From IMG/VR virus record IMGVR_UViG_3300044796_000657, positions 62,001 to 126,000 of that record: DNA of 64,000 nt. One strand, 5' to 3'. The notes below the pieces were generated by a model. The model was not told where the DNA came from, did not search any database, and was given only the letters and a program-made list of their open reading frames with translations. Positions 1 to 62,557 of this stretch are shown here, one piece after another. Both the position numbers and the translations under genes were made by a program. Within the stretch, counting starts at the first letter, position 1, and every line of letters starts with the position of its first letter.

Positions 1-297
1 TGTTTTGAAAGTGGCGTAAAATGTGCTTTTGAATGGGTCTTGCTCGTATGCTGCTTTGTATTGTTCGTTTGGTGTGCCTGATACACTCAACGTTAACAGC
101 GGAGCAATTTCAATGGGCTTGACTGCTTTGACTTGCGGCTTAGTTGAAAGGAGATCGTAATTGCAGAAATCACAGATGATCGTGCCTTCAGGGATGCGAT
201 TGAGGCATCCGGGGCATTCGTCCATTGTGAAATCGTAACCACATTGGCATACTTCGCCTTGCGGTCGTGCTTTACATTGTGGACAAGTAGTAATCAT
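1..297 (-). CDS. Double zinc-ribbon protein (runs off the window edge); paralog of 27276..27767 and 27771..28397
   Basis: Translated by hand: MITTCPQCKARPQGEVCQCGYDFTMDECPGCLNRIPEGTIICDFCNYDLLS; ATG at 297 lies 8 nt after the 14-bp element. Confidence 0.8.
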   Translation of the reverse strand, partial: MITTCPQCKARPQGEVCQCGYDFTMDECPGCLNRIPEGTIICDFCNYDLLSTKPQVKAVKPIEIAPLLTLSVSGTPNEQYKAAYEQDPFKSTFYATFKT

Positions 298-305
298 ACC
301 AATAG

Positions 306-319
306 GGATGTATGGTCAC
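306..319 (-). promoter_or_regulatory. 14-bp element (variant GTGACCATACATCC)
   Basis: Contains the TGA stop of 316..681; ATG at +9. Confidence 0.8.
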
Positions 320-681
320 AGACCGCCCGACTTCTTGAGAACACGCCCGTTAACGGCATTGCCAATTTTTTGCTGTGAAACTTTGATTTTAGGCAGTTTG
401 CGTTTACCAGCCCACTTCAGCATTGTAGGCGTCAAGATAATCGTTGCGTTTGGATCTTTTGAACCAATCGTAATGATACTAGCGTAGAAGCTCACCCTTG
501 CCTCAGTGTTGGCCAATCGCATGATCTTCTCAATGATTGCTGTGGTTTCGGCTTCATTGAGTTTGGGGAATGTATCACCACGCTGAAATGCCGGAATCAA
601 ATCAATGATTCCTTGTCTTGTCGCAACAGCTTGAGCAGCCCTAGCAGGATCGCTCAAGTCGTTTAGTTCTGGGAATGGCAT
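316..681 (-). CDS. Hypothetical protein
   Basis: ORF; AGGAG SD before ATG 681 (MPFPEL). Confidence 0.65.
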   Translation of the reverse strand: MPFPELNDLSDPARAAQAVATRQGIIDLIPAFQRGDTFPKLNEAETTAIIEKIMRLANTEARVSFYASIITIGSKDPNATIILTPTMLKWAGKRKLPKIKVSQQKIGNAVNGRVLKKSGGL

Positions 682-915
682 GTTAACTCTCCTTTTGAAC
701 ATTCTCAAACAAAGTACGGAGAACCATAGAGACTTCGCTGTTTTCGCAATCGTTAGCAATGTCGTCAAATCCAAGTTGTAGATCAGGCTCATCGTATTGG
801 TATGCAAAATTGAGAATTCGCATAACAGTACCGAGAGCCAACAACTAGCTTTTCAGGCGTTCATGATCAACGGTAGCAAATAACTGTTTAAGAGGCTTGC
901 GTGTACTTGTCATGA

Positions 916-1128
916 TTATCTCATACATTGGAAGGGAACGGCAGTGACGTTGATGCTGATGTCATCTGATTTGATGGGGCAAATGACATCACTTGCGATT
1001 TTTTTGGCATGGTCTGCATTCTGAATGCCTTGGACGCCAGAGTTAAGGTAAAACGTAGGCACTTGATGCGTCAAATCGCCTTTTGCTGTGTGATGAACAA
1101 CAGTGGCATCAATGGCATATAGTAGCAT
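916..1128 (-). CDS. Hypothetical protein
   Basis: ORF; GGGAG SD before ATG 1128. Confidence 0.6.
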   Translation of the reverse strand: MLLYAIDATVVHHTAKGDLTHQVPTFYLNSGVQGIQNADHAKKIASDVICPIKSDDISINVTAVPFQCMR

Positions 1129-1151
1129 GACGTTCTCCCTTATAACCATGT

Positions 1152-1165
1152 GGGTGTATGGTCAC
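1152..1165 (-). promoter_or_regulatory. 14-bp element GTGACCATACACCC
   Basis: Exact copy; T/A at +8/+9. Confidence 0.85.
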
Positions 1166-1513
1166 TCATATCATGGGATCAAAGGCAAGGAAAGTGTTAA
1201 ACTTAGGCCATTGTAAATGAGTTGCTAAGTCTTTGTTTTTATTGGCCCACTTGGTATTACAAGCGTAACAAGCCATAACAGTGTTAGGTCGTTCTATAAA
1301 AAGTTCTATATCATCAAATAGAACCCAAACACCATCAAGTGCCCCACCCTTACTAACAGGTCGTATATGTTCAACTGTTGCCATATAATCAGGAAATTGT
1401 ATCCCTTGAGGCTGCGGTTGCGGCAACTCCGTTAAACCAAAACACCAGAAGCATGTTCCCATTTGCTTGAAGAACAAATTATCCAATACCTCTCGCTTTC
1501 TCTTGCTTCCCAC
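1166..1513 (-). CDS. HNH endonuclease-like protein
   Basis: CFWC ... TVEHIRPVSKGG ... NTVMACYACN. Confidence 0.8.
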   Translation of the reverse strand: MGSKRKREVLDNLFFKQMGTCFWCFGLTELPQPQPQGIQFPDYMATVEHIRPVSKGGALDGVWVLFDDIELFIERPNTVMACYACNTKWANKNKDLATHLQWPKFNTFLAFDPMI

Positions 1514-1522
1514 GACAGTTTC

Positions 1523-1645
1523 CTATTTTAATTCAACATCAATTTTACATGATGTTAAGGTTACCACGGAATGGTATTCGGCTTTGACTCGTATTTGCTT
1601 GTGCTGACATCCTGCAAGCAACAAGATAAGCATCCATGCTTTCAT
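1523..1645 (-). CDS. Small putative lipoprotein (40 aa, not in the ORF track)
   Basis: MKAWMLILLLAGCQHKQ...: basic N-terminus, hydrophobic stretch, LAGC lipobox; fills the gap between neighbouring genes. Confidence 0.6.
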   Translation of the reverse strand: MKAWMLILLLAGCQHKQIRVKAEYHSVVTLTSCKIDVELK

Positions 1646-1657
1646 TTGAACCTTTCG

Positions 1658-1927
1658 TTAGTTGATGCCAAGTGCGTGATAATTGGCCCGCACATCGGCC
1701 ATATGGTTTCGGTAAATGTTTGTGTGATTCGGCAACACGCTGACCAGATCATTACGGTGAACTTGAAACAGTTGGGGATACTGCCGAGGGTTGATACCGT
1801 ATTTCACCTTAACCTCTTCAACAGTGAGGTATCCCGGCGATGGCATCCAAGCAGTCTTGCAAACAACCTCCAGAATGATCGCTTCACGACTTCCGGGTTC
1901 AGGAATTTGGCTGAATGCTGCTGCCAT
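1658..1927 (-). CDS. Hypothetical protein
   Basis: ORF with GAGGGG SD, downstream of a 14-bp element. Confidence 0.6.
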   Translation of the reverse strand: MAAAFSQIPEPGSREAIILEVVCKTAWMPSPGYLTVEEVKVKYGINPRQYPQLFQVHRNDLVSVLPNHTNIYRNHMADVRANYHALGIN

Positions 1928-1954
1928 GATAAAGCCCCTCGTTGTTAACCATAA

Positions 1955-1968
1955 GGGTGTATGGTCAC
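1955..1968 (-). promoter_or_regulatory. 14-bp element
   Basis: Exact copy; T/A at +8/+9. Confidence 0.85.
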
Positions 1969-1969
1969 G

Positions 1970-2446
1970 TTATAGTTCAGGGGAAAATTCACAGATGTTG
2001 AAGTTGGGTGTATCCACAATGTAGGGCTTAGGCCACTGCATCCAAAAGTATTCACGACGGAGCTTGTGGAAGAGATCGCTTTGAAGTTTGGTTGCGATGC
2101 CAATGGTGTAATTGTCGTTTTCAATCTCTTGCGTGAATGCTTCGTTGAACATCATTGCTAAACGAGAGTAAAGGTTAACACGGAAAAATGTTTTGTCTGA
2201 TGTTTCGATGTGTAAGAATTCGCCACGCATCCGACTGCTGCAAATTCTGGATAGGTGAATTTGGGCATTGGCATCGTAAACGCCAATCCAAATGTATACA
2301 GGCTTTTCGAGTAACTTGCTACTGCAAATTGGCGTATACAATTTCACCAAAATGATTTTGGCAAATTTCTTGGGGGCTTCAATTGCTTTGCCATAAGCGG
2401 GCAACGCAAGAGCAGCGGAAATGCCTAAGAAGGTTCTGCGGTTCAT
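1970..2446 (-). CDS. Hypothetical protein with twin-arginine (Tat)-like signal
   Basis: MNRRTFLGISAALALPAYG. Confidence 0.6.
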   Translation of the reverse strand: MNRRTFLGISAALALPAYGKAIEAPKKFAKIILVKLYTPICSSKLLEKPVYIWIGVYDANAQIHLSRICSSRMRGEFLHIETSDKTFFRVNLYSRLAMMFNEAFTQEIENDNYTIGIATKLQSDLFHKLRREYFWMQWPKPYIVDTPNFNICEFSPEL

Positions 2447-2447
2447 A

Positions 2448-2759
2448 TCAAAGTCCCCTTGACCTTTTTCGTGTTTTTTCGATCATATCAGCACGCAATT
2501 TTTTGATGACGTATGCCAAAGCGTCTTGCAGTGCGATTTCGGTGGCAGGTATCGCTGTTCGTTGGGCAGTTAACACGCCAATCAAATTAATGATTTCCTT
2601 GGTGGTGACCATCTCTTCCAAAATCAACACGATAGGCGTGGCGGAATGCTGCGTTTCTTTTTTGAGTTTGGCAACACCATCTTCCCACGAACCGGGAAAA
2701 CTTTTAACCGAGGGCACTGAAGCCCCGGAAGTTGACCGATAATAGAAGTAGATGTTCAT
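2448..2759 (-). CDS. Hypothetical protein (probably leaderless)
   Basis: ATG exactly 8 nt after the element; no SD. Confidence 0.6.
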   Translation of the reverse strand: MNIYFYYRSTSGASVPSVKSFPGSWEDGVAKLKKETQHSATPIVLILEEMVTTKEIINLIGVLTAQRTAIPATEIALQDALAYVIKKLRADMIEKTRKRSRGL

Positions 2760-2767
2760 ACCAATGA

Positions 2768-2781
2768 GGGTGTATGGTCAC
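2768..2781 (-). promoter_or_regulatory. 14-bp element
   Basis: Exact copy; ATG at +9. Confidence 0.85.
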
Positions 2782-2952
2782 CAATTATCGGGCGGCCCAT
2801 GACATGACGGGCAAAGCGTTCGGCGTGACCACTGGCCAGCAACGCACTTGTATTCATTGCCAACATACCCACATTCATGTGTGAATTTGTTGAAAACGAA
2901 ACCGTTTTGGGTCAAGATTGCTGCTTTGAGAGCGTTCATGTTAACCTCAGAG

Positions 2953-3024
2953 TGGGCCGACCCGGATTCGAACCGAGAACCAAGACATTATGAGTATCCT
3001 GCTCTACCGTTGAGCTATCGGCCC
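2953..3024 (-). tRNA. tRNA with CAU anticodon, most likely tRNA-Ile2 (lysidine type); CCA not encoded
   Basis: GGGCCGA-TAGCTCAACGGTAGAGCA-GGATA-CTCATAA-TGTCT-TGGTT-CTCGGTTCGAATCCGGG-TCGGCCC-A. G1-C72 pair and no GGG/CCC anticodon stem argue against initiator; C4-G69/C5-G68 as in Ile2. Confidence 0.9.
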
Positions 3025-3219
3025 ATTGAATTCATTTCTCGCAGTAGCAGTGATTGGTCAAGTCCATCAACAATTCCCCGTTGACGTACTTTTCCCGTGC
3101 CTGCTTCACGGGCAGAAAATAATCCCTTGAGGCATCCCGTGAATCACGGATTATCCGAACCGTTTCCACTTTGATCTGTTTCCGTTTCACAATGAACTCC
3201 TTGGGATAGGGGCACGAAC

Positions 3220-3248
3220 ACTATAACCAATTATACCACTCTTGTCAA
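3220..3248 (-). promoter_or_regulatory. sigma70-like promoter upstream of a small ORF and the tRNA
   Basis: TTGACA-17-TATAGT. Confidence 0.7.
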
Positions 3249-4303
3249 TCATAAATTTTGATTTTTGTGATATGTCCGCATTTACAGACATACACTGCAT
3301 GTCTTCCGCTCCACATCTCCTTGAATGGTGAGGGTTTATTGCATTCAGAACACTTCACCTTTTCAGTTAAGAAGTTGATGATTGTATTTTTCAAACGAGT
3401 GAGAAATCTTAACATATTACTCACCTTTTGGGATAAGAGACAAGATAGCATGATCCCTTGACGGATGCGTTGGTGTGTCGCTAGAAAGCCATACTACGCC
3501 ATGTGACCAAACTCCTGTTGCAATCGCATAGTTGATCATCTTCTGACCAGACAATACATTGTCCGGATTTTTACAACGCAATCCCAAATGAGTAGTAATC
3601 GGATGAAGCGTTGGCTCTTGACAAGTAGGGCAAACAAGCCTTGCCATGAATGCTTCAACGTCGGCAAGAGGAATAGCGACCCATCGATTGCCGCCTACTT
3701 TCAACAAACAACCAACATGTATTCCATCCCAAAACATATCCTTGCCATTGATCTTTAACCGTCCTGTCCAACGCAATTTATACCCGTCTGGCAAGGAATT
3801 ACGTGCGCCAGCATCGAGACGTTGGTCGCCAGTGAAGCCGAATTTTTGGAAGTAGTGCCTCTTGCCAGCCACGACCTACTCCTTTGTTGAATTGATTTCA
3901 CCATCCGGGTGAATAGTGTAAGTAATGGTGCCGGGGCCATACCAAACGCTTTTGGTGGTGCCGGGCTTCCAAGCGGTATCAATTTTTTCCAAAACGATCT
4001 TGTGGGTAATCGTCTTGCTTTGAGGAGCCGGAAGATCGTTGTCGGTGTAATTCATACGATTAACTTTCGTAATGATTGTCGTGACCGGATTCATCGTAGA
4101 TTGGCTCCCCATACGGCAATTCATCATTGCAGTAGGCTTCGTGGGCCATGATGCCATCACGAAAACCTTCGGCAAAATCGGTATTACCACGCTTGCTTTC
4201 AGGAAGCACGGTTTCACCACCTCGCCCCAGATTCCAACCTTCCCAATACTGAGTTTCCTTGATCGTCATTGCTGACCCTCGTTAACCATTTGGACAACAA
4301 TAG

Positions 4304-4317
4304 GGGTGTATGGTCAC
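4304..4317 (-). promoter_or_regulatory. 14-bp element
   Basis: Exact copy; T/G at +8/+9. Confidence 0.85.
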
Positions 4318-5095
4318 TGGTTGTTTGGCTTTCTGTCTCTTATGATCTTTAACAGCATCTTTATCGTTGAGACGCCTAATTGTTCGACTGACATTACAAC
4401 CACGAATGCCAACCAAACAAACGCCCAAATTGGCAGCGTAACGAATAGTATAAGTACCATCGCTTTCTTTTGTCGCTTTGTAAGACATTAGATTTTACCT
4501 ATTCTGTCTCGGTTGTAGGAGGCAGTCATGTCCTCTTGATCGGTGGTCGTGACGACATTGCTGCCTTCAAACGCCACGATGGTATACACTTCCCCTACCG
4601 TCAAAGGAGCATATTTACCAGTGTAGCCTGTTGGCTTCTGAAGCAATCGTACCGACTCCCCCACTTTGAAGGTAGGATGTTTGATGGTCTTGCCGTGGGC
4701 CGGGCAAAAACCAACTTGATCGCACTTACAGACGACACCGGGACAAACAGCTTTGCCATTGTCGCCAAGGATATAATCGAGCATCTTAAGCATGTGCTGA
4801 CTCCGGTTTGTTGGTATCAATCATTGCCACGATTTTGCGAAGCCTTGTGATGTCCTGCGTTTCAAGCCAGTTCATCGGCAAGGATGAAATTAACAGTAAC
4901 CCCAAATTGAAGGCTTCATCACAAGTCAGAACGAGTTCCAATTCCCGATCCTTGATTGCCGCTGGCCCTGCTGTCACCTTTTGTTTGACATAAAGGCGAG
5001 TTACACCGTCAGTAATGGCGTTGCGGCGTGATGAAATCGGGTTCGTAACCAGTTGTGATGTTGTATCTTTCATGACAGCCTCTTGTTAACGTGAG

Positions 5096-5109
5096 GGGTG
5101 TATGGTCAC
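5096..5109 (-). promoter_or_regulatory. 14-bp element
   Basis: Exact copy; contains stop of 5106..5741. Confidence 0.85.
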
Positions 5110-5741
5110 TCAGGGATGGTAGCCAATATCGTATCAATATCGGCCAATTGGCCTTTGGTTACATGGGCTTGTCGTTCAAACAGATTGCCGAGATGCGGCC
5201 ATACGTGATCAGGAGTGATGCCATTACGCCAAGCCCGCAAACGTTGAGCGGCACCTTGAACTTTTTTGTTAGGCAAGTGTAGTTGGGCACATACATTCCA
5301 AATTGTTCCAATATGATCTTCGTAATCTGGATCTGACTCTGTGAATTGTTGAGCCTGCGTTGTGATCAATGGCTTGTTGCGAACACATCGCCCAAGGATT
5401 GTTCGGCACTTTTTGGCCGTTTCTTCCAATCCATAGTTAACACGATATTTGGGATCGAGTTCGTTAGGGGACATCCACGTTGACGCACCAGTACGAGCAA
5501 CGCTGATTTCATCTTCTGCCATACAGTCAAAATTTCCGACAAACGGTGCTGTGTCCATTGGAACAATGAGATACATATCATCAATGATGTTAACTACCAA
5601 CCATGACAATCCAATTGGATCGGTAAGGTCGGGCAGTACAAACACATCACCGATAGCAGCCGGGCCGTCTTTGGGCGGCTTGGCATTGGTGAGCTTAGCT
5701 GCGGCATCAGCAACGGCGGCTTTGATTTTGGTGGTGTTCAT
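5106..5741 (-). CDS. Hypothetical protein (probably leaderless)
   Basis: 211-aa ORF flanked by two elements; ATG at +9. Confidence 0.7.
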   Translation of the reverse strand: MNTTKIKAAVADAAAKLTNAKPPKDGPAAIGDVFVLPDLTDPIGLSWLVVNIIDDMYLIVPMDTAPFVGNFDCMAEDEISVARTGASTWMSPNELDPKYRVNYGLEETAKKCRTILGRCVRNKPLITTQAQQFTESDPDYEDHIGTIWNVCAQLHLPNKKVQGAAQRLRAWRNGITPDHVWPHLGNLFERQAHVTKGQLADIDTILATIPE

Positions 5742-5749
5742 AACTCTCC

Positions 5750-5763
5750 GGGTGTATGGTCAC
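5750..5763 (-). promoter_or_regulatory. 14-bp element
   Basis: Exact copy; contains stop of 5760..6086; ATG at +9. Confidence 0.85.
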
Positions 5764-6086
5764 AGTTGAGTTTTGCGGCCAGTGAGTACATTCACAACAA
5801 CTTCATTTTGTCCGAAAGCCGCACGCATTTCGTACATCTCTTCGGCGGTTGGTTCAACGCCTTCTTGCTGTTGACGATATTCTTTAACGAATGCTTGAAT
5901 CTCTTGTGATTGCGCCAATTTTTGGGCCGCACGATCTACCGGAATACCGTAAGATTCGCAGGAGTCCAATGGGCAGCAGCGATCCGTTTCCACCCATCGC
6001 CAAACCTTACCATCATCGGTATAGGCTTGACTGTCAAATGTCCAATTGCTATGACTTTTGGTGAAAGTTTCAGTGCGTCGTGCCAT
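5760..6086 (-). CDS. Hypothetical protein
   Basis: ORF between two elements; likely start MARRTE. Confidence 0.65.
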   Translation of the reverse strand: MARRTETFTKSHSNWTFDSQAYTDDGKVWRWVETDRCCPLDSCESYGIPVDRAAQKLAQSQEIQAFVKEYRQQQEGVEPTAEEMYEMRAAFGQNEVVVNVLTGRKTQL

Positions 6087-6128
6087 TTGAATACTCGGTG
6101 AGAGAGGATGTAACCAAGTTAACAAGTA

Positions 6129-6142
6129 GGGTGTATGGTCAC
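6129..6142 (-). promoter_or_regulatory. 14-bp element
   Basis: Exact copy. Confidence 0.85.
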
Positions 6143-7097
6143 TAAATGCCAATGCTTTTTATCATTTGTTTATACTTTGTGGATTTTGATTTCAATTGGA
6201 GGGCAGTGCGTATGACTACCTTGGCAGCAATACGTTTGAAGGCGAAGGATTTGTCCTTAAGTATTTCCGTGATTTGGAAAATGGTAAGAATTTCCTCCAA
6301 GAAAATCTCATCTTCTGGCTTCGATGCCCGCAAAACTGGAAGATTCTTCAATAGATCAAAGGCACGAACGAGTTGTTCATCGGTCACTGGGTTCTGGGGT
6401 ATTTTCATGGCATCCACGCAATGAATTTACAAGTTAGGGTAAGTTCGATTCGTTGGATTTCATCTTCACGACAATACACAACGAACCGAATGCCGTGTTC
6501 AAACATCGCTTTGCGAAACATTGGAATTCACCTCAGCCCGTGAAAGAACGTATCGGATGTCACCAAAGATTGTTAAGATCATATCATCGGCGTCTTTGAA
6601 ATCGCCATTACCAACATATCTGAGAATGAGACGTTGGCTCCTGTCGCTGTATGGAACACAAACATACTTCAATCCCATCACAAGGCTTCCAATTTCAAGA
6701 TAGCTCATGGCATCCTACCGGTAAAGGGGAACAATCATTTCTTCAACAGTAGTAGTTATGAAGACATCACCCTTATTAACAGTATTGCGGTTGCCTCGTT
6801 CGTAAGCGTATTCGCCAACAGCGATTTTGCGGTAAATGGCGTGGGGTTCGGGAATGAAGCAGAACAGATCGTTAACATTCAAGCCGCTGAATGGAATAGC
6901 CATGCCTTCATTGACAAAGCGGGAAATTGTTATCAGTCTGGGGTGTTCGGTATTGTTGCGATTGATCTTGATAGCACAAGACTCGCAATAGAGTCGATGA
7001 TCAAGTGAGTGATGGCAATTATCGTGGGGATTGGTACACCGAGTTACCGAACACTTAGGATTTTCTGGCATTGTTTATTCCTCATTGGTACCTATTA

Positions 7098-7111
7098 GGG
7101 TGTATGGTCAC
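7098..7111 (-). promoter_or_regulatory. 14-bp element
   Basis: Exact copy; contains stop of the GNAT gene. Confidence 0.85.
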
Positions 7112-7449
7112 TTCACCTTTCGCATCATGAAATAACCATCAACACGCTCATAAGTTTTGAATCCGAATTTGGTATAAAGTTTAATGGCAGGGTCATTTTT
7201 CTCACCAACAGCAATACGGAGACGCAGTCCCTTGGCGTATTTTTCAATCCATTGTAATACCTTTGTTCCGAAACCTTGACGGCGATAATTCTCATTTACA
7301 TGAAGATAACCAATGTAGATTTCGTCTTTTTTTTTGGTTGTGAGAATAACGTATGCAATGATAGGGCTATACTTGTCGCCGTCTTTGGCGACAAGTTGAA
7401 ATGACGGCCCTGCTACCCGCTCTAAATCGTATCTTTGCATGAGCAACAT
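7108..7449 (-). CDS. GNAT-family N-acetyltransferase
   Basis: LHVNENYRRQGFG acetyl-CoA motif; NDPAIKLYTKFGF. Confidence 0.85.
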   Translation of the reverse strand: MLLMQRYDLERVAGPSFQLVAKDGDKYSPIIAYVILTTKKKDEIYIGYLHVNENYRRQGFGTKVLQWIEKYAKGLRLRIAVGEKNDPAIKLYTKFGFKTYERVDGYFMMRKVK

Positions 7450-7912
7450 CGATCATCCTTATCGGGAAACGATACGCTTGAACGAGGGCAGGAAGAAATA
7501 GTTCTGCTTATCATTACTTGGCCAGAAGATTCGTACCAATCGTCCCCAACTCCATCCACAACCCTCATTGGACGGGAAGGAAATGTCGAAGTATTTACCG
7601 AAGATGGTAAATCCCCAACACTTAACATTCTTGTGATACCAATGAATCTTGAACATGTTATCCCCAATAAATAGGTTTTTCAACGATGTACCACTTTTCA
7701 AGCAATCGCTTACAAACAAATAAATCAACGCTCCATTTGCCCGGACAAACCAATTGAGGTTCGCCAAAATGGAATGTATCTTTCAAGACAGGATCATTGA
7801 ATTGCTTCTTGATCCACTCCACTGCTTTTTCAAATGTTTCACAAGGCTGAATTTCAAGCGATGTATTAACAAAAAAGATCACCATTGGCGTTCTCTCACA
7901 ATGCGAACATAC

Positions 7913-7941
7913 ACATTAGCCTACCATTTAGCTTTTGTCAA
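7913..7941 (-). promoter_or_regulatory. sigma70-like promoter
   Basis: TTGACA-17-TAATGT. Confidence 0.6.
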
Positions 7942-9261: not shown

Positions 9262-9265
9262 TTGA

Positions 9266-54787: not shown

Positions 54788-55525
54788 TCATGCCTGAGAG
54801 GGTGTATGGTCACTCAATGCTTGAAGCCAATGGATAAGCCTTTTGGCACCATGTAGGTCTTTTGAATTGTGTTTAACTAATACTGCCGACATATCAAAAT
54901 GACAGTTGCGATGAAAAAGTCGGCCATCTACAACATAGAAGCGGTCACGGGCGAAATTTGGATCACGCCACTTGCTAAGTTTTTCGCCCTCTTGATGTTG
55001 GCCGAATAAGCCAAACCGCTCATCCACTCGCTCTTCAACTCGTTGCCAAAAATAAGTTCTAAAACCATCAGGCATTGGCATTTCAACACATTGATTGATG
55101 TTAACACTTCGCTCTTTATTGTAATCTGGTTTCGCACTGTCAATTGTCTTACAAAGCAATAAAAACTTGGAAACAGCAGGCTCTACCAATTCCATACGAA
55201 GTCGCTGCTTTTCATCTTCTTTCATCCCAATATATTTACGAAGACTAACATCAGGCCGTGTTTCCTTAATGACTGATGCCTTGCCAAAAAAACCACCGCC
55301 ACCCTTAACGATACTACGTCCAGCTTGTGGCTTATCCCACTCGTCCACAATGGGCCTAAACTCTTTGTGAAACTTCTCAAACGAAACTTTACGAATTTTG
55401 CCATTTTCATCAACCAAATCCAATTTTTTTGCTTTCAATCCATGTTCGGAGCCAATGTAAAGCCACAAAGAGTTGTCAGTTGTGCGATGCATGGTCTGAG
55501 GAACGTAAAGCATAAAAGCCTCCAT
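54788..55525 (-). CDS. Hypothetical protein
   Basis: 245-aa ORF. Confidence 0.65.
   Translation of the reverse strand: MEAFMLYVPQTMHRTTDNSLWLYIGSEHGLKAKKLDLVDENGKIRKVSFEKFHKEFRPIVDEWDKPQAGRSIVKGGGGFFGKASVIKETRPDVSLRKYIGMKEDEKQRLRMELVEPAVSKFLLLCKTIDSAKPDYNKERSVNINQCVEMPMPDGFRTYFWQRVEERVDERFGLFGQHQEGEKLSKWRDPNFARDRFYVVDGRLFHRNCHFDMSAVLVKHNSKDLHGAKRLIHWLQALSDHTPSQA
54800..54813 (-). promoter_or_regulatory. 14-bp element
   Basis: Exact copy; ATG of 54513..54791 at +9. Confidence 0.85.
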
Positions 55526-55533
55526 TTTCCATC

Positions 55534-55562
55534 AGTATAACATTTTATCGCACTAAAGTCAA
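55534..55562 (-). promoter_or_regulatory. sigma70-like promoter
   Basis: TTGACT-17-TATACT. Confidence 0.65.
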
Positions 55563-56163
55563 GTAAAAAGCGTCAATCAACACGATAAACCTTGTTCCGC
55601 CTACTCAAACTGGCCAAGACCTGAAATTTGTCTTCGTAAAGAATAGAGTTAACTTCTTCTGCTTCAAACAAAGCGGTGCCATTAATGGCATTCATCAATT
55701 CTTTGCCTTTTGCGATACTCTCTATTGCCGTATCTTTGAACCAGTAGTAATGGTTATCGGTATTTGTGCTGCGATAAAACTTCGTACTTGGAGCAGGCAA
55801 ATAAGAGTTATACCATCGCATAACTTCGTTGATTTTATTCAAGTTGAATTTAAGATTTTTCAATCCTTTGCTATTAGGATATTGTTGAATACCCCAAGCA
55901 AAAGTCAACAAACCTTCACTCTCATAACGACCACCATAAACGAATCTATAATAACTCATTTGAACGCAATCCTTTCACCAAAGGGCGTTGATGCCGCCGC
56001 TTGAATTCTTCGATGCCAATCGTTTTGAGATACAACCCACTGCGTTCGCTGTGAATTTTAAAGATTCTTCGTTTTTTTGGAGTTTGACACGGTTCTCCGG
56101 GCTTCGCCTGACACCGGGAACATATCGTTGAGTTTTTAGCATCAGTGCTTGCCCATCCAGTTA

Positions 56164-57114
56164 TCATTTAGCGGCTATCCTTTTTTCGTCCAAGTAAAGA
56201 TGTTCTGGTCTAACACATAGATCGTTATCACAGGTGTGTAATACTCGCTTACCTTCCGGAATATCACCATAAGCCAATCCGTACGCTACTCTGTGCGCCA
56301 ACTTTGGCGAATGATCTACACTGAAATGGCCGAACCCATTATGATTGTACGCCGTCCATTCCCAACACTCGCCGCTCTTGTCAACCTTCTTCCAGAATCT
56401 CTCATCAATCGATTCCTTCGAACGATTCGGTAATCTCTCAATCTTTTCTGGTGGATGATATTCGGCATCATACCAACTGTGATTGTAAACCACCGCATGG
56501 ATCGTCTGGCGGCTTGTATTGTATTGCTTTGCCATTTCACCAATGTTAACAGGCCCGGCTACAACCGCTGCTCTAATAGCATCAACATCCGGCTTTGTTA
56601 ACTTCGCATTCACCAAACCTAAGTCGGCACGTTCCAAAGCAATAAGGTGTTCTGGATTGTGGCATTCTTCATTCTTGCAACTTCTCGTCACTTCTTGCGA
56701 TTTTCTGAGAGGGGATTTGAAGAGTTCATAAATTCCACGAACCAACAATCTCATACCTGTTGGCAGAGATAGAGACTTCGGCTTTTCCCCTTGCCAAACC
56801 CAACAATCATCTACGACCTTGACACAGGATTGAATCCGTGCTTTCAGGTCTTCAACAGGAACAGTTGATTTGAGTGAGTTGGCCAAACGGAGGTGTTCGG
56901 ATTTAATACAAAGGGGATTTTGACAGGTGCGTGTGATGTGGGCACCCTTTGGAATATTTCCGTGTGTTAATTCATAAGCGACACGATGGGCAATGAGTCT
57001 CCCACCCGCCATTTGGAAAACGCCGTATAATGGCTTGGGGTTAAGTGTCCCTTTCCAAATCAAACAATCGCCTTCTACTGCTGCATTAGCCCAAAATTCT
57101 TCTTGGTTTATCAT
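56164..57114 (-). CDS. HNH homing-endonuclease-like protein with three HNH units and an HTH
   Basis: CLIWKG/CWVWQG/CWEWTA; AHRVAY twice; C.N..C...HL three times. Confidence 0.85.
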   Translation of the reverse strand: MINQEEFWANAAVEGDCLIWKGTLNPKPLYGVFQMAGGRLIAHRVAYELTHGNIPKGAHITRTCQNPLCIKSEHLRLANSLKSTVPVEDLKARIQSCVKVVDDCWVWQGEKPKSLSLPTGMRLLVRGIYELFKSPLRKSQEVTRSCKNEECHNPEHLIALERADLGLVNAKLTKPDVDAIRAAVVAGPVNIGEMAKQYNTSRQTIHAVVYNHSWYDAEYHPPEKIERLPNRSKESIDERFWKKVDKSGECWEWTAYNHNGFGHFSVDHSPKLAHRVAYGLAYGDIPEGKRVLHTCDNDLCVRPEHLYLDEKRIAAK

Positions 57115-57339
57115 AGGATTTTCTTAAGTAAAAAATGTTTCATCAGTATAATGTTCTTTTTTGTATATTCAAGTACAGGTTATCGAGTTTGCGATTTCAA
57201 AGTCGCCATTGCAACCTGATACAATTCTTTGCCCAATCTTCGTTCTAGGCTTTGACGAATATCTTGTGGCAGTTTAGGATTACGAAGTTGTTCTAAGATC
57301 AAATCCAAGCGATCATTTTTTAACATGTTAATCCCCAAT

Positions 57340-57367
57340 AAACAAAACCGGCCCGAAGGCCGGTCTT
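57340..57367 (-). terminator. Intrinsic terminator with UUCG tetraloop
   Basis: AAGACCGGCC-TTCG-GGCCGGTTTTGTTT. Confidence 0.85.
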
Positions 57368-57370
57368 AAC

Positions 57371-57718
57371 TCACGAAAGTGTAGCAAGGATTTCTTTGAC
57401 TGTCTGCTCACCGTATTTTTCTGTCCACTGTTTATACTGCTTGACCATATTGACAATTTCAATTGCCACTTCCGCAGTATTAACCACTGGCGGCTTTTCT
57501 GCACGCCCAAGGTATTGCCGATTTTTGAATGGTCTGGTTGTTCCTATGATCTTAGCACGGCCTGAAGATATGTAATTTTTAGGAACAGAGTGCCCGAATT
57601 GGTCTTGAATGTACCTCTGAATGTCTTCGGTACTTCTAAGTCCGGTATTACAAGCGGCCTTAATAGACGCAAATGTATTGAACTTCTTGACCGTTTCAAC
57701 TTTAACTTCTTCCATCAT
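57371..57718 (-). CDS. Small putative DNA-binding protein; resembles 8172..8546
   Basis: STEDIQRYIQDQFGHSVPKNYISSGR; GGAGG SD. Confidence 0.55.
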   Translation of the reverse strand: MMEEVKVETVKKFNTFASIKAACNTGLRSTEDIQRYIQDQFGHSVPKNYISSGRAKIIGTTRPFKNRQYLGRAEKPPVVNTAEVAIEIVNMVKQYKQWTEKYGEQTVKEILATLS

Positions 57719-58421
57719 GACATTCCTCCTCCAGAGTAGTGTTATTAGAACCAACGCCCAATTTGCCTGCTCGAAATTTCCATGCCATCATTTTAGATGT
57801 ATCTTGATAAATTTTTGGCAATCCAATTTTGGCATCAGGAAACATCATTTGAAACATGGTTTTGTAAGTAGCAATTAACTCGTTTTTCGCCATCCTCAAA
57901 TTTCGACTATATGTTTTTGGATATGAGGATTCCATCCAAGATTTAAGGTTTGAATAATCAGCGAATCCACGGGGGATACAATAAAACGTGAAACTCAAAA
58001 AGGCATTTTCAGCTAATCGGGGCCGTAAATGTCCAAAAAGCCAAGAGAAAAGATCGCCGTTAATGTTGCCGCATAGATCGGCATTGAGCAAATCTACCGG
58101 TGGCTCTTCATCCGTCAAAACGACAGAACTCAATTCGCCATAGATACACTTAACCAAATCTTTATTGATACACTTTTGACGCACTAGACTATTTTTGACT
58201 TTAATCATTTTGTCAAAATTTGGCCCGTTTCGTTCAACAAATTTCAAAAGAGTTTGATTGCCAATCACCAACTTTTCCAACGCTTTCTTTACACACACAC
58301 CATCGCTACTTGGTAAAAAAATAGCATGTTTGGCTTCTTGCTTAATGTTGAAAGTCCAATTTCTTATTTCGTCTTTTGCCGGTCTTTTTTGAGCACACCA
58401 AGGATTATTAATACCCTTCAT
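57702..58421 (-). CDS. Hypothetical protein, possibly methyltransferase fold
   Basis: FVERN, VDLLNADLCG; weak. Confidence 0.45.
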   Translation of the reverse strand: MKGINNPWCAQKRPAKDEIRNWTFNIKQEAKHAIFLPSSDGVCVKKALEKLVIGNQTLLKFVERNGPNFDKMIKVKNSLVRQKCINKDLVKCIYGELSSVVLTDEEPPVDLLNADLCGNINGDLFSWLFGHLRPRLAENAFLSFTFYCIPRGFADYSNLKSWMESSYPKTYSRNLRMAKNELIATYKTMFQMMFPDAKIGLPKIYQDTSKMMAWKFRAGKLGVGSNNTTLEEECHDGRS

Positions 58422-59566
58422 TTCTCAGCCTCGAAGTAAAATTCATTTACTGATTATACTTCCAGTCAAGCGATTATCAAGGTTTTATAAAATGAGTCAT
58501 TTTGAAACTAAAAATACGTCAATGGGATCGAAAGTCCTAGTCAGCCAAAAATTCATCCACGCTATTGCACGTTTGTCCCCACCGAAAATTAATATGGGTA
58601 TCCAAGCCAATAACACGAACATGCCAATCGTAGCAAGCCACAAAAGAACCAACACAATTCCAAAACAATACCTAAGCCATTTTTTCATCTATGGTACACC
58701 CATTACTTTCTTTTGAACACACATACAAAACCTAGAAACACATAATGCCCATCTATCAACGTAAGGCTCACCTGTAATTAATTGCATTATCCAACACGGC
58801 CCTAAGACCATTATAGCAACCAAAATAGTCACTATGGCCAAATGGAACAAAAACAAGCATACCAATGCATATCTGATACTTTGCCACACTTTACTGATTT
58901 TCATCTGGTTCTTCTCCAAGTGATTGTAGGAAGCACTCCCACCCATGAGACCATTTTCTATCTCTTGCATGTCCGAAAAATTTTTCTATAACGATTAGAA
59001 AAAACCACGGTGGCAACCATAACAACAAAATAACCAAAGCGACAGGAAACATCACTACATGTCGCATCGCAGTCCAAATCTTAATGTTCATTTCTTTGGC
59101 TCAATCTCCAACTTTGTATACAAAAAGTTATTGGTGTTATCCGCACTGAGATAAGTGCATTGGATAATGAAGGGCTGTTTGACTTTCATCCAAATTTCCA
59201 CACTATCTCCATAAGTGCTGCCGAAACGACTGCTACTCTTAACAACTTTCACTTCTAATATCGTGACGAGTTCATAATCATCGCACGTTTTGAAATCCCA
59301 TTTTTGGCCCCACTTGGCATTCAATTTCAGACAAGTAATACCATCAGGCTTTAATTTGACGATTTGTTTATGATTTTTCTCTGTCACTAAATTGGTAATT
59401 AACTCTTTGTCGTTTTGGTTTTGAACACAACTGTAGACGCCGCAAGTAAGAGAGAACATAAGGATAAGAGAGAACAGAACCCACAAAATGGTTTTCATGA
59501 CATTTTTCCTGTATTGTTTAGTAATTGTACAACAACAAACAACACAGATCAATACTAATTAATTAT

Positions 59567-60187
59567 ATGAAAATAGGCATCGTTTCGTGTTGGAATAAAA
59601 AGTACGAGGTGTTGGCAAATTTAGTATTGCCAAATCGTAGAATCTATTGCGAAAAACATGGTTACGAGAGTGTAGAAGTAGGTGGTTGGGACTCTGACAC
59701 GTGGGAAGGCCGGGCAGCTTGCTGGGGTCGGATGGACGTTTCAAGAAAAGTTTTGCACCGCTTTGATGCTATCTTTGTCATGGACATTGATGCTGTTATC
59801 ACCAACATGGATATTAAAATCGAAGATTTAGCTACTCACGACTTTGTCAGTACAGCCGATGTGAATGGCCTAAACGCCGGAATGATTTTAATTAAGCATA
59901 CGGATTGGTCGGCAGCATTTATGGATAAGTATTGGGAAACAGGAAAGCGTTATCAACACTTTCCCAATAGCGAACAAAGTTGTATGGCACATCTTTTGAT
60001 TTGTGAGCCACAAGAGAAGTGGTCAATCAAACCACAACGCACCATGAACAGTTTTCCATATCATCTGTACGAAGATTTCAAATTCCCTGAAGGGCAGTGG
60101 GAAAGTTTGGATTTTATTTTACACACTCCTGCCTTGGATATTCAGACAAGATTGAAGGTACTAGGTGAGGCAATTTTGGTCGATTAA
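59567..60187 (+). CDS. Glycosyltransferase family 34-like (second copy)
   Basis: YCEKHGY, FDAIFVMDIDA, LNAG, EQ, MNSF, DFILH. Confidence 0.8.
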   Translation: MKIGIVSCWNKKYEVLANLVLPNRRIYCEKHGYESVEVGGWDSDTWEGRAACWGRMDVSRKVLHRFDAIFVMDIDAVITNMDIKIEDLATHDFVSTADVNGLNAGMILIKHTDWSAAFMDKYWETGKRYQHFPNSEQSCMAHLLICEPQEKWSIKPQRTMNSFPYHLYEDFKFPEGQWESLDFILHTPALDIQTRLKVLGEAILVD

Positions 60188-60776
60188 AATAAGATAATTT
60201 TTGATAATGTGTGAATCCAAAATATGTTAATATTTTATTATTGATGTCTCTAAGAATCAAAGTCAGAGTTGCTGACTTCTTTTCCTTCATGCGATCTGCT
60301 ATCCATCGTATCGGCAATAAATACTGATTCCATTTTATTTTTTGCATTTGAAAAAAAATGCCAATGCCACGACGAATAGGAATACTAAGTATCGTAAATT
60401 CGAGTAAATTTGATCTTACTTCCAAAGCAATATCAGCAGGTGAGATGTCCATTGGTTCCCAAGAAGTAATTACATATCTTATTATATCACCTTTTGCCAA
60501 AGAAGAGTTTTGGATATTTTGAAAGTGATTACTCATCCTTGAAAATTCCCGACTAAAAGTCGTTTTTTTATTTTTTATTTTTAACCACAAAGAAACATCG
60601 CTAAGTGTAATTCCCACATTTTGAATTATCACTTCTAAATACTCAGAAGAAATTATCGAAGAATAGCCTGTACTAAATTTCAACAATTTAACTTTTGGTT
60701 TATGACTCCTGATATAATTATTAATACTAATTGTTAATGCTATTAAACCTATTGAAATTGCAATTACATTTTCCAA
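60114..60776 (-). CDS. AT-rich hypothetical protein with N-terminal membrane anchor
   Basis: IAISIGLIALTISI; markedly AT-rich DNA. Confidence 0.5.
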   Translation of the reverse strand: MENVIAISIGLIALTISINNYIRSHKPKVKLLKFSTGYSSIISSEYLEVIIQNVGITLSDVSLWLKIKNKKTTFSREFSRMSNHFQNIQNSSLAKGDIIRYVITSWEPMDISPADIALEVRSNLLEFTILSIPIRRGIGIFFQMQKIKWNQYLLPIRWIADRMKEKKSATLTLILRDINNKILTYFGFTHYQKLSYFNRPKLPHLVPSILSEYPRQECVK

Positions 60777-60802
60777 ATCGTCACCTTATAAAAATAAAAA
60801 AA

Positions 60803-61099
60803 TTATTTCCTAATAAGAAAACCATCGGCAATAGTTGTTTCGGGTACGCAAATCCATGTCCGCAATTTAGGATTAATCGACATTCGATGTATAGCAATTG
60901 CGGCAATTAAATATGATTTCCCGCTACCAGTAGGAAGGTTATTGATTCGAAATGGCTTATCGTGTTGATGAAGCCACCCTTCCGTCTGTCCTTGTCGTAG
61001 AAGATCATAACCATTAGCTTTTTGATCGGGTAATGCTGACTTCAGGAGGTTCCAACCTAGTTTTGCAGCAGTGGAAATGTTAAAGTTTTTATTGTTCAT
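60803..61099 (-). pseudogene. Truncated SF2 helicase (N-terminal part only)
   Basis: LRQGQ, LPTGSGKS, WICVP, then stop. Confidence 0.6.
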
Positions 61100-61917
61100 C
61101 TACAAAGTATAACAATTAATTTTATGAATTCAATTTCGTTAACTTGGATTTTCTTTTCAAAACTCGCAGCGTTCTACCGCCTTCAATTGTTAATTTCCCA
61201 TTCGCTCTAATAAGACCGAACGAAACAAGCAGATCAAAATTAGGGCCACTCTTAACCCTCTTTTCGACAACCGACGAACCTGCCTTTTTGAGCAAGGCAA
61301 ATTGACCTGCCGTTAAAATCACTTCACCATTTCTTATTTTTTGACGAATGTTGCTCATTTGATCTCCTTTGCCAAGACGTAATACCACCTGTCCGGTTCC
61401 ACATAATCCAACATCCACAAGTGCCCACCGATATTAACTGTGCGGTGTGGCCTTTCAACTATCTCGCCACTGCTCAATGCCCATCCACCTTCACAAACAG
61501 CCGCATAAATGACAATTTGGCTAATATCCCCCAATTTCATTGTAGGTGCTGACAGATTTCGTTCTATGGAAGCACGAATACAAGATAATCCCGTCTTGTA
61601 TTGGATGAGCGTGATTTCGCTTTTTGTAATACCGATGACAATGTAATACATGCGGTTGCGAGAACGGCTACTATAGCCCTTGCCATTGGTGAATTCATCT
61701 GCCGCCATTTCAATAGCGGTGTTAATTTTCAAGCCTTCCGGCAGAATATAGAACATTCCGGGCGTATTGGCTTGTGTCCAAAACTTGCGATCCATACCAC
61801 CGGCTGAATTTTGATTCGGGGTGATGGTTGCTACCCAATTGTTACCATTCTGGGTAAGCAAAGGTACCTTAGTCATCGCACCATCTTCAAGTGGTATCTT
61901 AACTATAGGGCGTTCCA

Positions 61918-62535
61918 TTATTTACCTCTCAAATGGCTTAACTTATCAGCAATTTGATTACCGCCACGGGGAATCCATTTCACACGTTCACCAAACTTGG
62001 TAGAAGCAAACTGATTGTCAGTATAAATTTCATCATTGTATTCAGGCGAAGGATATTGATCCAATGCAAACTGAATACCCAATTCTTCCGCTTCTTGTGA
62101 ACTTTCGCACGCAACGTTTCGCACAAACACATCCATATCACCGTTTACCCATTTGTGAATTACGGCAATACGTGCTTTCCCCAATTTCCAACCCGCATCA
62201 ACAAAGATCCCTGCCGAAATAATAGTCTGTTTATCAGTTAAGAGTGGTTCAACCTCAACCGACAGATTTTCAATGGCACGAATGATTTTTGCCGCACCTT
62301 CATCGGTTTGTCTGTAGTTGTAACGAAGAAGTTCGTCAAGGAGAGTTCTTGTTGAAATTATCCTTGCTGACCGCCAGCCGGTGGGCATAAATTTGATTTC
62401 GCCATCTTTGTTAACCCAAACGTTATGCTTGCCACCGGCGTGCGGAATCTGCATGTGATACGAAGTATGTACTTCAACGCTATAACCATGAGCGGTAAGA
62501 AGGTCAACAACGTAATTGGCATTTATCCGGTTCAT
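61918..62535 (-). CDS. Protein with C-terminal RNase H-like domain (probably leaderless)
   Basis: IFVDAG, SQEAE..GI..AL, IYTDNQ, WIPRGGNQIADKLS. Confidence 0.8.
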   Translation of the reverse strand: MNRINANYVVDLLTAHGYSVEVHTSYHMQIPHAGGKHNVWVNKDGEIKFMPTGWRSARIISTRTLLDELLRYNYRQTDEGAAKIIRAIENLSVEVEPLLTDKQTIISAGIFVDAGWKLGKARIAVIHKWVNGDMDVFVRNVACESSQEAEELGIQFALDQYPSPEYNDEIYTDNQFASTKFGERVKWIPRGGNQIADKLSHLRGK

Positions 62536-62543
62536 GTTATGTG

Positions 62544-62557
62544 GGGTGTATGGTCAC
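62544..62557 (-). promoter_or_regulatory. 14-bp element
   Basis: Exact copy; ATG at +9. Confidence 0.85.

What the first reader, a model, noticed from the sequence alone, without database searches (positions are those of the whole stretch)
297..62557. Five genes start exactly at the predicted +1: leaderless mRNAs in a genome that encodes its own IF-1
Seen: ATGs at 297, 2759, 5741, 54791 and 62535 each begin exactly 8 nt after the 14-mer, and no properly spaced SD fits in that gap. Most other element-led genes have a longer leader with an SD. Five hits at the same offset independently pin the start site. Inference: these are leaderless transcripts. A link to the phage IF-1 (32710..32946) is speculative.
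Basis: partly seen in the sequence, partly recalled or inferred. Interest (0 to 1): 0.6.

Follow-up and report, generated by a model that had tools for sequence, protein, structure and literature searches.

The report
Probable leaderless genes behind a phage promoter
In a giant (at least 430 kb) peat-soil phage, six unrelated genes start exactly 8 bases after a promoter-like 14-base motif repeated about 100 times, so their messages probably begin at the start codon; this is a known way of starting translation, it was not confirmed here by RNA data, and nothing ties it to the phage's own IF-1.

Summary
On the minus strand, GTGACCATACACCC (one copy ends ATCC) lies exactly 8 nt before the ATGs at window 297, 2759, 5741, 54791 and 62535. 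A sixth case lies outside the window.

Across the 430-kb genome there are 104 GTGACCATACA cores.
- All 6 ATGs at offset 8 open ORFs of 72-288 aa, and the six proteins are unrelated.
- No ORF-opening ATG lies at offsets 9-14.
- 35 of the 46 exact 14-mers lead SD-led starts at offsets 17-41.

The motif behaves like a promoter.
- It is co-oriented with the genes.
- Seven copies sit 9-16 nt after strong terminators.
- Its weaker downstream half ends in T (67%) then a purine (88%) exactly where these ATGs begin, which fits a pyrimidine(-1)/purine(+1) start site.

Leaderless transcripts are therefore the best reading (about 0.55). No transcription start was mapped: the only RNA run is held as contigs.

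Caveats:
- About a third of crudely called genes lack an SD anyway.
- Four of the six follow an upstream stop inside the motif, and one has an ATGA overlap.
- One has a marginal GGAG, and one has an alternative GTG start.

The IF-1 link is unsupported, because the phage also encodes IF-3 and bS21.

A second class turned up: TAAATA-N4-ATG at 17 genes, nature unresolved.

The parts
298..319 (-). Promoter-like element: 14-mer variant GTGACCATACATCC at 306-319, plus the 8-nt downstream half (298-305) that abuts the ATG
1..297 (-). 5' part of a 288-aa ORF (full ORF genome 61433-62297). It begins MITTCPQC, and a double zinc-ribbon pattern starts at residue 5
2760..2781 (-). Promoter-like element (14-mer at 2768-2781) plus 8-nt spacer
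2448..2759 (-). 103-aa orphan ORF with its ATG at offset 8. An alternative in-frame GTG at codon 15 lies behind GGGG
5742..5763 (-). Promoter-like element (14-mer at 5750-5763) plus 8-nt spacer GGAGAGTT. The GGAG ends 4 nt before the ATG
5106..5741 (-). 211-aa orphan ORF with its ATG at offset 8. The next in-frame start is only at codon 33. It has the highest coding score over its first 27 codons
54792..54813 (-). Promoter-like element (14-mer at 54800-54813) plus 8-nt spacer. It lies inside the last codons of the upstream 245-aa ORF
54513..54791 (-). 92-aa orphan ORF with its ATG at offset 8. The ATG overlaps the upstream gene's TGA (ATGA)
62536..62557 (-). Promoter-like element (14-mer at 62544-62557) plus 8-nt spacer
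61918..62535 (-). 205-aa orphan ORF with its ATG at offset 8. The upstream ORF ends in TAG 31 nt before the ATG, ahead of the element
1152..63270 (-). 27 further copies of the element in the window, all on the minus strand. Most are followed by a 17-41-nt leader with an SD
32710..32946 (-). IF-1 (infA-like, 78 aa). Its start overlaps the upstream stop (TAATG). It lies in the block downstream of the element at 35611-35624

Best explanation
The 14-mer GTGACCATACACCC, together with a weaker downstream half (consensus Y-N-A-T-N-G-K-T), is a phage-specific promoter of one gene class. It occurs about 100 times, almost all on one strand, between genome 28 and 172 kb.

Transcription most likely starts at the purine 9 nt after the 14-mer. 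For most genes this gives a 10-35-nt leader carrying an SD.

At six unrelated genes (five in the window) the A of the ATG occupies that +1 position. Transcripts made from the gene's own promoter would then be leaderless and would be translated by 5'-terminal-AUG recognition.

The same genes also sit inside longer read-through transcripts from upstream promoters. There, SD-independent initiation or re-initiation could add to their translation.

What is shown: the motif, its copy number and orientation, the exact offset, the ORFs, and the conservation pattern. What is inferred: promoter function, the exact start site, use of these ATGs, and which polymerase or sigma factor reads the motif. No phage RNA polymerase was detected, but two phage sigma-70-family genes are present.
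For: Exact offset at five window sites and a sixth elsewhere.

Histogram over the 104 cores:
- 6 of 6 ATGs at offset 8 open long ORFs, against about 1 in 3 for the incidental ATGs at offset 2.
- None open an ORF at offsets 9-14.

The six proteins are unrelated.

Motif logo:
- No conservation upstream of the 14-mer.
- Conservation runs through T (67%) at offset 8 and a purine (88%) at offset 9, then drops to background.

The base before the ATG is a pyrimidine in 6 of 6 of these genes, against 53% in 198 SD-led genes.

SD sequences of leadered genes begin at offset 10 or later, with one probable mis-call. The shortest leader has its ATG at offset 19 and GGAGGTG at offsets 10-16.

Seven strong intrinsic terminators end 9-16 nt upstream of an element. 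An RNA-level element in that position would rarely be transcribed.

Evidence on the starts themselves:
- In 4 of 5 window genes the next in-frame start is at codon 25-33 and has no SD.
- The 288-aa ORF has a four-cysteine zinc-ribbon pattern from residue 5 that only the offset-8 ATG can encode.
- The collection's gene calls use the offset-8 ATG for the 205- and 211-aa genes.
Against: - No 5'-end data exist. The metatranscriptome run is held as contigs, and they span the elements.
- The start site could lie a few nt upstream. Offset 6 is a G in 62% of copies.
- If the A-T at offsets 3-4 belongs to a -10-like element, the start could instead lie downstream of the ATG.
- SD-less starts are common in this genome, about a third of crude calls, so the ribosome evidently initiates without an SD on internal sites too.
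- In 4 of 6 cases the upstream ORF stops at the TGA inside the element, 18 nt before the ATG, and in one case ATG and TGA overlap. Re-initiation is therefore available.
- The 5741 site has GGAG 4 nt before the ATG, and the 2759 gene has an alternative GTG start.
- JGI's gene caller started the 288-aa gene at its second ATG, and homologues lack the zinc-ribbon extension.
- No relative carrying the same motif was found, so no cross-genome check was possible.
Confidence: 0.55

Rival explanations
1. The element is a promoter, but its start site is not on the ATG. It lies either further downstream or several nt upstream. The six genes are translated mainly from read-through polycistronic RNA by SD-independent initiation or termination-reinitiation. 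In this view the fixed offset reflects tight packing of a gene start against the last constrained promoter base.
For: - Upstream ORFs stop at the TGA inside the element (18 nt before the ATG) in 4 of 6 cases, and one case is an ATGA overlap.
- About a third of crude genes lack an SD.
- RNA-library contigs run across the elements.
- The A-T at offsets 3-4 and the A-rich offsets 12-13 would allow a -10-like box with a later start.
Against: - The upstream stop sits at three different distances from the ATG, yet the offset to the element is identical in all six.
- There is no tail of SD-less starts at offsets 9-14, and none is used at offsets 0-7, although those bases are only weakly constrained.
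- A start site beyond offset 10 would cut off the SD of the shortest leaders.
- The pyrimidine/purine pair sits exactly at the -1/+1 position.
Confidence: 0.25
2. The element is not a promoter. It is an RNA-level site, such as a processing or protein-binding site in polycistronic RNA, or a DNA site for another protein. Any 5' end at the ATG would then arise by cleavage.
For: - The 11-nt core is invariant and shows no -35/-10 layout.
- A subset can fold GUGACCAU with AUGGUUAC into a hairpin, down to -14 kcal/mol.
- Cores also occur as tandem arrays and as convergent pairs about 70 bp apart, which is odd for promoters.
Against: - The hairpin is not general: mean -3.9 against -3.1 kcal/mol for controls.
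- T rather than C is conserved at offset 8, which does not fit a hairpin or a palindrome.
- Strong terminators lie 9-16 nt upstream of seven copies.
- Orientation always matches the downstream gene, and the distance to SD-led starts is promoter-like.
Confidence: 0.08
3. Some or all of the offset-8 ATGs are not the real starts. The proteins begin at downstream codons, and the ATGs are incidental matches to the A-T-rich motif positions.
For: - From the column frequencies at offsets 9-11 (my arithmetic), about 2-3 ATGs at this offset are expected by chance.
- The 2759 gene has a GTG at codon 15 behind GGGG.
- JGI called the 288-aa gene from its second ATG, and the homologues are shorter at the N-terminus.
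- Coding scores over the first 27 codons are only modestly positive for most.
Against: - 6 of 6 are in frame and open. Taking the roughly 1-in-3 seen for incidental ATGs, the chance of that is about 0.0014 (my arithmetic).
- Four of the five window genes have no SD-led alternative and would leave 70-100 nt without coding in a compact genome.
- The zinc-ribbon pattern at residues 5-20 is unlikely in non-coding sequence.
Confidence: 0.08
4. The phage IF-1 exists specifically to promote translation of these leaderless messages.
For: - IF-1 is real and lies in an element-led block.
- A review reports that IF1 and IF2 stimulate leaderless translation in vitro and that IF1 strongly stimulates 70S scanning (PMC9031893).
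Against: - The same genome encodes IF-3, reported to inhibit leaderless initiation when raised, and bS21, but no IF-2.
- None of its three CAT-anticodon tRNAs looks like an initiator.
- IF1 and IF3 are common in huge phages with no known link to leaderless mRNAs (PMC7162821).
- The 14-mer class contributes only 6 of roughly 600 genes.
Confidence: 0.05

Closest known systems
Leaderless phage mRNAs such as lambda cI transcribed from pRM (PMC10491246; review PMC9031893)
   Same: The ATG sits at the inferred +1, with no SD. All six use ATG, as 5'-terminal-AUG recognition requires.
   Different: Here the promoter is a repeated phage-specific 14-mer shared with dozens of leadered genes. The start site is inferred, not mapped.
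Single-block promoters read by phage-encoded sigma factors or polymerases (T4 late TATAAATA with gp55; phiEco32 gp36; T7-type promoters). Recalled from memory, not checked here.
   Same: One highly conserved block repeated before many genes of one class, with no -35 partner. The phage carries its own sigma-family genes.
   Different: The sequence is unlike any of these. No single-subunit or multisubunit RNA polymerase was detected. Which factor reads the motif is unknown.
Thermus phages phiYS40 and P23-45, reported to make leaderless middle/late transcripts. Recalled from memory; I did not find or read these papers.
   Same: A phage gene class in which promoters place +1 on the start codon.
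   Different: In this genome only a minority of the class is leaderless. The host and the polymerase are unknown.
Transcriptome-mapped jumbo phages phiKZ and AR9
   Same: A large phage with many copies of a class-specific promoter motif.
   Different: phiKZ showed no leaderless transcript (PMC8244752), and AR9 leaders are 26-491 nt (PMC5312081). Leaderless genes would therefore be unusual among the jumbo phages studied so far.
Huge phages carrying translation genes (PMC7162821)
   Same: IF-1, IF-3, bS21, 37 tRNAs, a tmRNA and an aminoacyl-tRNA synthetase.
   Different: That paper draws no link to leaderless messages, and none could be shown here.

Membership tests
Leaderless mRNA | The primary 5' end coincides with, or lies within a few nt of, the start codon | not testable with these tools
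   The only RNA run is kept as contigs, so no 5' ends are visible. The start is inferred only from the T/purine conservation at offsets 8/9.
Leaderless mRNA | The start codon is AUG at the 5' end and no SD is used | tested here: met
   6 of 6 are ATG. Five of six have no SD-like run. The 5741 site has GGAG 4 nt upstream, which would not be transcribed from its own promoter if +1 is the A.
Leaderless mRNA | The promoter element lies at one fixed short distance from the start codon | tested here: met
   The spacing is exactly 8 nt in all six, with none at offsets 9-14.
Leaderless mRNA | The protein really starts at that AUG | tested here: inconclusive
   For: a zinc-ribbon pattern from residue 5; no nearby alternative in 4 of 5; gene calls agree for two genes. 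Against: JGI used the second ATG for one gene, and its homologues lack that N-terminus. The structure prediction was uninformative.
Phage class-specific promoter | A conserved motif repeated far above chance, intergenic, and co-oriented with the downstream genes | tested here: met
   32 hits against 0.39 expected in the window. 104 cores in the genome, clustered at 28-172 kb and almost all on the gene strand. 54 lead SD-led starts.
Phage class-specific promoter | Transcripts initiate at it, and a cognate polymerase or sigma factor is identified | not testable with these tools
   Two sigma-70-family ORFs are present. No RNA polymerase was found. The large unknown proteins have no matches. No assignment is possible.
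Canonical sigma-70 -35/-10 promoter | Two hexamers about 17 bp apart that resemble TTGACA and TATAAT | tested here: not met
   There is no conservation upstream of the 14-mer. The two conserved blocks are only about 10 nt apart.
Hairpin promoter or RNA stem-loop element | A stable, conserved stem-loop | tested here: not met
   Mean folding energy is -3.9 against -3.1 kcal/mol for controls. Only a subset forms the stem.
Translational coupling (stop-start overlap or re-initiation) | The upstream stop overlaps the start or lies within a few nt of it | tested here: inconclusive
   ATGA overlap at 54791. The stop lies 18 nt upstream in four cases and 28 nt upstream in one.
Bacterial-type IF-1 (infA) | A full-length match to the S1-like IF-1 fold family above the curated cut-off | tested here: met
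   PF01176, 88.6 bits against a cut-off of 30.2, covering residues 7-72.

The most novel reading that the evidence does not exclude
Leaderless initiation is a programmed feature of this giant phage rather than six oddities. Two unrelated promoter-like signals both place +1 on the ATG: the 14-mer at offset 8 (6 genes) and the hexamer TAAATA at offset 4 (17 genes). The TAAATA class includes a pair of divergent genes with only 32 nt between their start codons. The phage also brings its own IF-1, IF-3 and bS21 to tune start-site choice. If so, this would be the first jumbo or huge phage with a sizeable leaderless gene set.
Probability: 0.2. Interest if true: 0.7.

Novelty: new member of a known kind. 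Interest (0 to 1): 0.45.

Why it matters
If confirmed, the exact-offset genes give a single-nucleotide anchor for the start site of an otherwise uncharacterised promoter in an uncultured phage of at least 430 kb. They would also show that huge phages can use leaderless initiation; phiKZ showed no leaderless transcript, and AR9 leaders are 26 nt or longer. It would give a concrete, testable setting for asking what phage-encoded IF-1, IF-3 and bS21 do. In itself, leaderless translation of phage genes is established biology.

Tried and rejected
1. RNA evidence. One metatranscriptome run holds 85% of window 1-6000, but only as contigs. It shows no 5' ends, no joints and no differences, and its contigs cross the elements. 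I sent 6,000 letters.

2. Relatives with the same motif.
- A scan of viral contigs for the 14-mer gave only single, chance-level hits.
- A scan of metagenome contigs for the 14-mer plus N8 plus ATG gave single hits apart from one locus (L162) with two cores on opposite strands, which I take as chance.
- A few of those hits were gut-metagenome contigs. I did not analyse them further and took none for human DNA.

3. Relatives by protein. No close relative was found in viral contigs for the 205- and 211-aa proteins, the 173-aa sigma factor or the DnaE-like protein. Word searches found no homologues for two of the proteins and three shorter ones for the 288-aa protein, in unrelated operon contexts. 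No cross-genome test of the arrangement was therefore possible.

4. Hairpin model: rejected.

5. Two-hexamer sigma-70 model: rejected.

6. GTTAAC as a second promoter box. It is over-represented but spread evenly and has no conserved flanks.

7. Search for the polymerase.
- PF00940, PF00562 and PF00623 gave no match.
- The four largest unknown proteins had no Pfam, PHROGs or PDB-sequence match.
- The rest of the 614-kb source contig could not be searched.

8. Single-sequence structure prediction of the 205-aa protein: pLDDT 35, unusable.

9. Initiator tRNA. None of the three CAT-anticodon tRNAs has initiator features.

10. Host guess from the synthetase: only 28% identity to Bdellovibrionales entries, which is uninformative.

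11. The count of terminators upstream of elements is not above random (9 of 104 against 6%). Only their tight 9-16-nt spacing to the element is informative.


Full report
**What the window is.** The window is bases 62001-126000 of a single 430,229-bp IMG/VR virus record. The matching DNA and RNA sequencing runs are labelled peat metagenome. The same genes lie on a JGI contig of 614,480 bp, so the 430-kb record is probably a trimmed piece.

The genome looks like a huge phage:
- 37 tRNAs and a tmRNA;
- a class-I aminoacyl-tRNA synthetase and a DnaE-like polymerase;
- IF-1, IF-3 and bS21;
- two sigma-70-family genes.

**The observation.** All features are on the minus strand. The 14-mer GTGACCATACACCC occupies window 2768-2781, 5750-5763, 54800-54813 and 62544-62557. 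The one-mismatch form ending ATCC occupies 306-319. In each case exactly eight bases separate it from an ATG whose A is at 2759, 5741, 54791, 62535 and 297.

- The window holds 32 copies with up to 2 mismatches, against 0.39 expected.
- The genome holds 46 exact copies and 104 exact GTGACCATACA cores. Nearly all are on the minus strand between 28 and 172 kb.
- The ATGs open ORFs of 288, 103, 211, 92 and 205 aa.
- A sixth case lies at genome 35365, behind a core variant, with a 72-aa ORF.
- The six proteins share no similarity, so the cases are independent rather than duplicated.

Over the 104 cores:
- Offset 8 has six ATGs, and all six open ORFs of at least 60 aa.
- Offsets 9-14 have none that open an ORF.
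- The main cloud of starts lies at offsets 17-41 and is SD-led. This covers 35 of the 46 exact copies.
- ATGs at offsets 2, 3 and 6 are part of the motif's own downstream half. Only about a third are in frame, as chance predicts, and all but one ambiguous case (window 8586) have an SD-led in-frame start further on.

**Is the element a promoter?**
- There is no conservation upstream of the 14-mer. Downstream there is a weaker half, Y-N-A-T-N-G-K-T, followed by a purine (T 67% at offset 8, purine 88% at offset 9). After that the information content falls to background.
- Every copy that precedes a gene has the gene's orientation.
- Seven strong intrinsic terminators end 9-16 nt before a copy. 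That is a terminator-then-promoter layout, and it is hard to reconcile with an RNA-level element.
- A hairpin between the core and the downstream half forms in only a subset: mean -3.9 against -3.1 kcal/mol in controls.
- The layout does not fit a two-hexamer sigma-70 promoter.

I put promoter function at about 0.85.

Who reads the element is open. No single-subunit or multisubunit polymerase was detected in the 430 kb. The large unknown proteins match nothing. The two phage sigma factors are candidates.

**Where is +1?** Three indirect lines point to the base 9 nt after the 14-mer.
- The conserved T-then-purine pair sits there in all 104 copies, matching the pyrimidine(-1)/purine(+1) preference of multisubunit polymerases. 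This is textbook knowledge, not tested here.
- With one probable mis-call, the SD sequences of leadered genes begin at offset 10 or later. The shortest leader has GGAGGTG at offsets 10-16 and its ATG at offset 19. The start therefore cannot be much later.
- The six SD-less genes all place their A exactly there. The base before it is a pyrimidine in 6 of 6, against 53% in 198 SD-led genes.

A start a few bases earlier cannot be excluded; offset 6 is a G in 62% of copies. That would still give a leader shorter than the 10-nt limit that one dRNA-seq study used to define leaderless (PMC8244752).

**Are the ATGs real starts?**

Evidence for:
- 6 of 6 are in frame and open.
- In four of the five window genes the next in-frame start is at codon 25-33 without an SD.
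- The 288-aa ORF has a CxxC-x8-CxC pattern from residue 5, which forms a double zinc ribbon with a second CxxC pair. The Pfam DZR profile aligns over residues 5-46, but at a non-significant E-value.
- The collection's gene calls use the offset-8 ATG for the 205- and 211-aa genes.

Evidence against:
- JGI called the 288-aa gene from its second ATG, and three homologues lack the ribbon region.
- The 103-aa gene has a GTG at codon 15 behind GGGG.
- Codon-usage scores over the first 27 codons are positive but modest.
- Structure prediction failed.

**Rival mechanisms.**
- The genes are co-directional with few terminators, so read-through RNA must also carry them. RNA-library contigs do cross the elements.
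- On such RNA, re-initiation is possible. Four upstream ORFs stop at the TGA inside the element, 18 nt before the ATG. One shows an ATGA overlap, and one stops 28 nt upstream.
- Because the stop sits at three different distances while the element offset is constant, the element rather than the stop fixes the ATG position.
- About a third of crudely called genes lack an SD. Absence of an SD is therefore weak evidence on its own.

**IF-1.** The gene at 32710-32946 is a full-length IF-1. Its start overlaps the upstream stop, and it lies in an element-led block.

- A review states that IF1 and IF2 stimulate leaderless translation in vitro, whereas raised IF3 inhibits it (PMC9031893).
- This phage also encodes IF-3 and bS21 but not IF-2. 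None of its three CAT-anticodon tRNAs looks like an initiator.
- IF1 and IF3 are common in huge phages (PMC7162821).

The set looks like a general translation kit, and a specific link is unsupported.

**An extra finding that bears on the question.** The hexamer TAAATA sits almost only just before start codons.
- Among 580 first-ATG ORFs it occurs 24 times in the 40 nt upstream. Twenty-two of those have a spacer of 0-7 nt, and 12 have a spacer of exactly 4 nt.
- Seventeen genes have TAAATA-N4-ATG with no SD. One is in the window (ATG at 29261).
- A pyrimidine precedes the ATG in 16 of 17. Combined with the 14-mer class this is 22 of 23, p about 9e-6.
- Two divergent genes at genome 298708 and 298741 have only 32 nt between their start codons, each with its own TAAATA-N4.
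- Another such gene follows a strong terminator by about 27 nt.

This may be a second, -10-like promoter class giving leaderless messages. Alternatively it may be an A/U-rich translation signal in the RNA. I could not decide between the two.

**Comparison and verdict.**
- Leaderless phage messages are established (lambda cI, PMC10491246; review PMC9031893).
- Among mapped jumbo phages, none was seen in phiKZ (PMC8244752), and AR9 leaders are at least 26 nt (PMC5312081).
- No relative with this motif exists in the searched collections, so the case rests on one genome.

The leaderless reading is the best explanation at about 0.55. The IF-1 link is not supported. I class the finding as a new member of a known kind, of moderate interest.

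Noticed in passing
window 29259-29271 (minus strand); genome-wide list in notebook entry 3: The hexamer TAAATA lies exactly 4 nt before the ATG of 17 genes with no SD, and a pyrimidine precedes the ATG in 16 of 17. The set includes a divergent pair with 32 nt between the two start codons (genome 298708/298741) and one gene right after a terminator (genome 362019). It could be a -10-like promoter giving leaderless messages, or an A/U-rich translation signal.
   Followed up: partly
genome 28699-29872 and 32017-32364 (L111:6699-7872 and 10017-10364): Arrays of the GTGACCATACA core occur here. Seven plus-strand copies flank, and run antisense to, a 259-aa minus-strand ORF. Four minus-strand copies, three of them with a 40-nt period, lie upstream of a 676-aa UvrD-like helicase.
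   Followed up: partly
genome 32208/32276, 34898/34967, 40269/40341, 45898/45970 (L111, L112): Convergent pairs of cores lie about 70 bp apart and have their own conserved flanks. Three of the minus-strand partners sit directly after strong terminators. Their function is unknown: small RNAs, regulatory sites or a mobile unit.
   Followed up: no
window 2952-3024 (minus strand): tRNA with a CAT anticodon, 171 nt upstream of the offset-8 element at 2768-2781. It has a G1-C72 pair and no run of three G-C pairs in the anticodon stem, so it is not initiator-like. The genome has 37 tRNAs and a tmRNA.
   Followed up: yes
genome 223482-223730 (L239) and 231564-231695 (L240): The phage also encodes IF-3 (180-aa frame) and ribosomal protein bS21. 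No IF-2 was found.
   Followed up: partly
whole record; L221: The same genes lie on a JGI contig of 614,480 bp. The 430-kb record that IMG/VR labels a provirus is therefore probably a trimmed part of a larger phage contig. The remaining 184 kb could not be searched.
   Followed up: partly
window 316-318, 2778-2780, 5760-5762: The TGA inside GTGACC serves as the stop codon of the upstream ORF at four of the six offset-8 sites. Gene end, promoter and next gene start are packed into 22 nt.
   Followed up: yes
whole genome: GATATC occurs only 13 times and CTATAG 27 times in 430 kb, while GTTAAC occurs 312 times. This may reflect restriction-site avoidance.
   Followed up: no
window 10227-10255 (minus strand): A variant element (ending ATCC) is followed by an ATG at offset 15 that opens a 231-aa ORF, with only AAGG 1 nt upstream of it. 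If +1 is at offset 9, the leader would be about 7 nt.
   Followed up: no
L115:131-997 (window 1-297 plus upstream): The 288-aa protein is a conserved core of about 215 aa, with homologues in other phage-like contigs, fused to an N-terminal double zinc ribbon that the homologues lack.
   Followed up: partly
window 11018-12430 and 56164-57114 (minus strand): A D12-class adenine DNA methyltransferase and an HNH homing-type endonuclease lie in the element-rich region.
   Followed up: no
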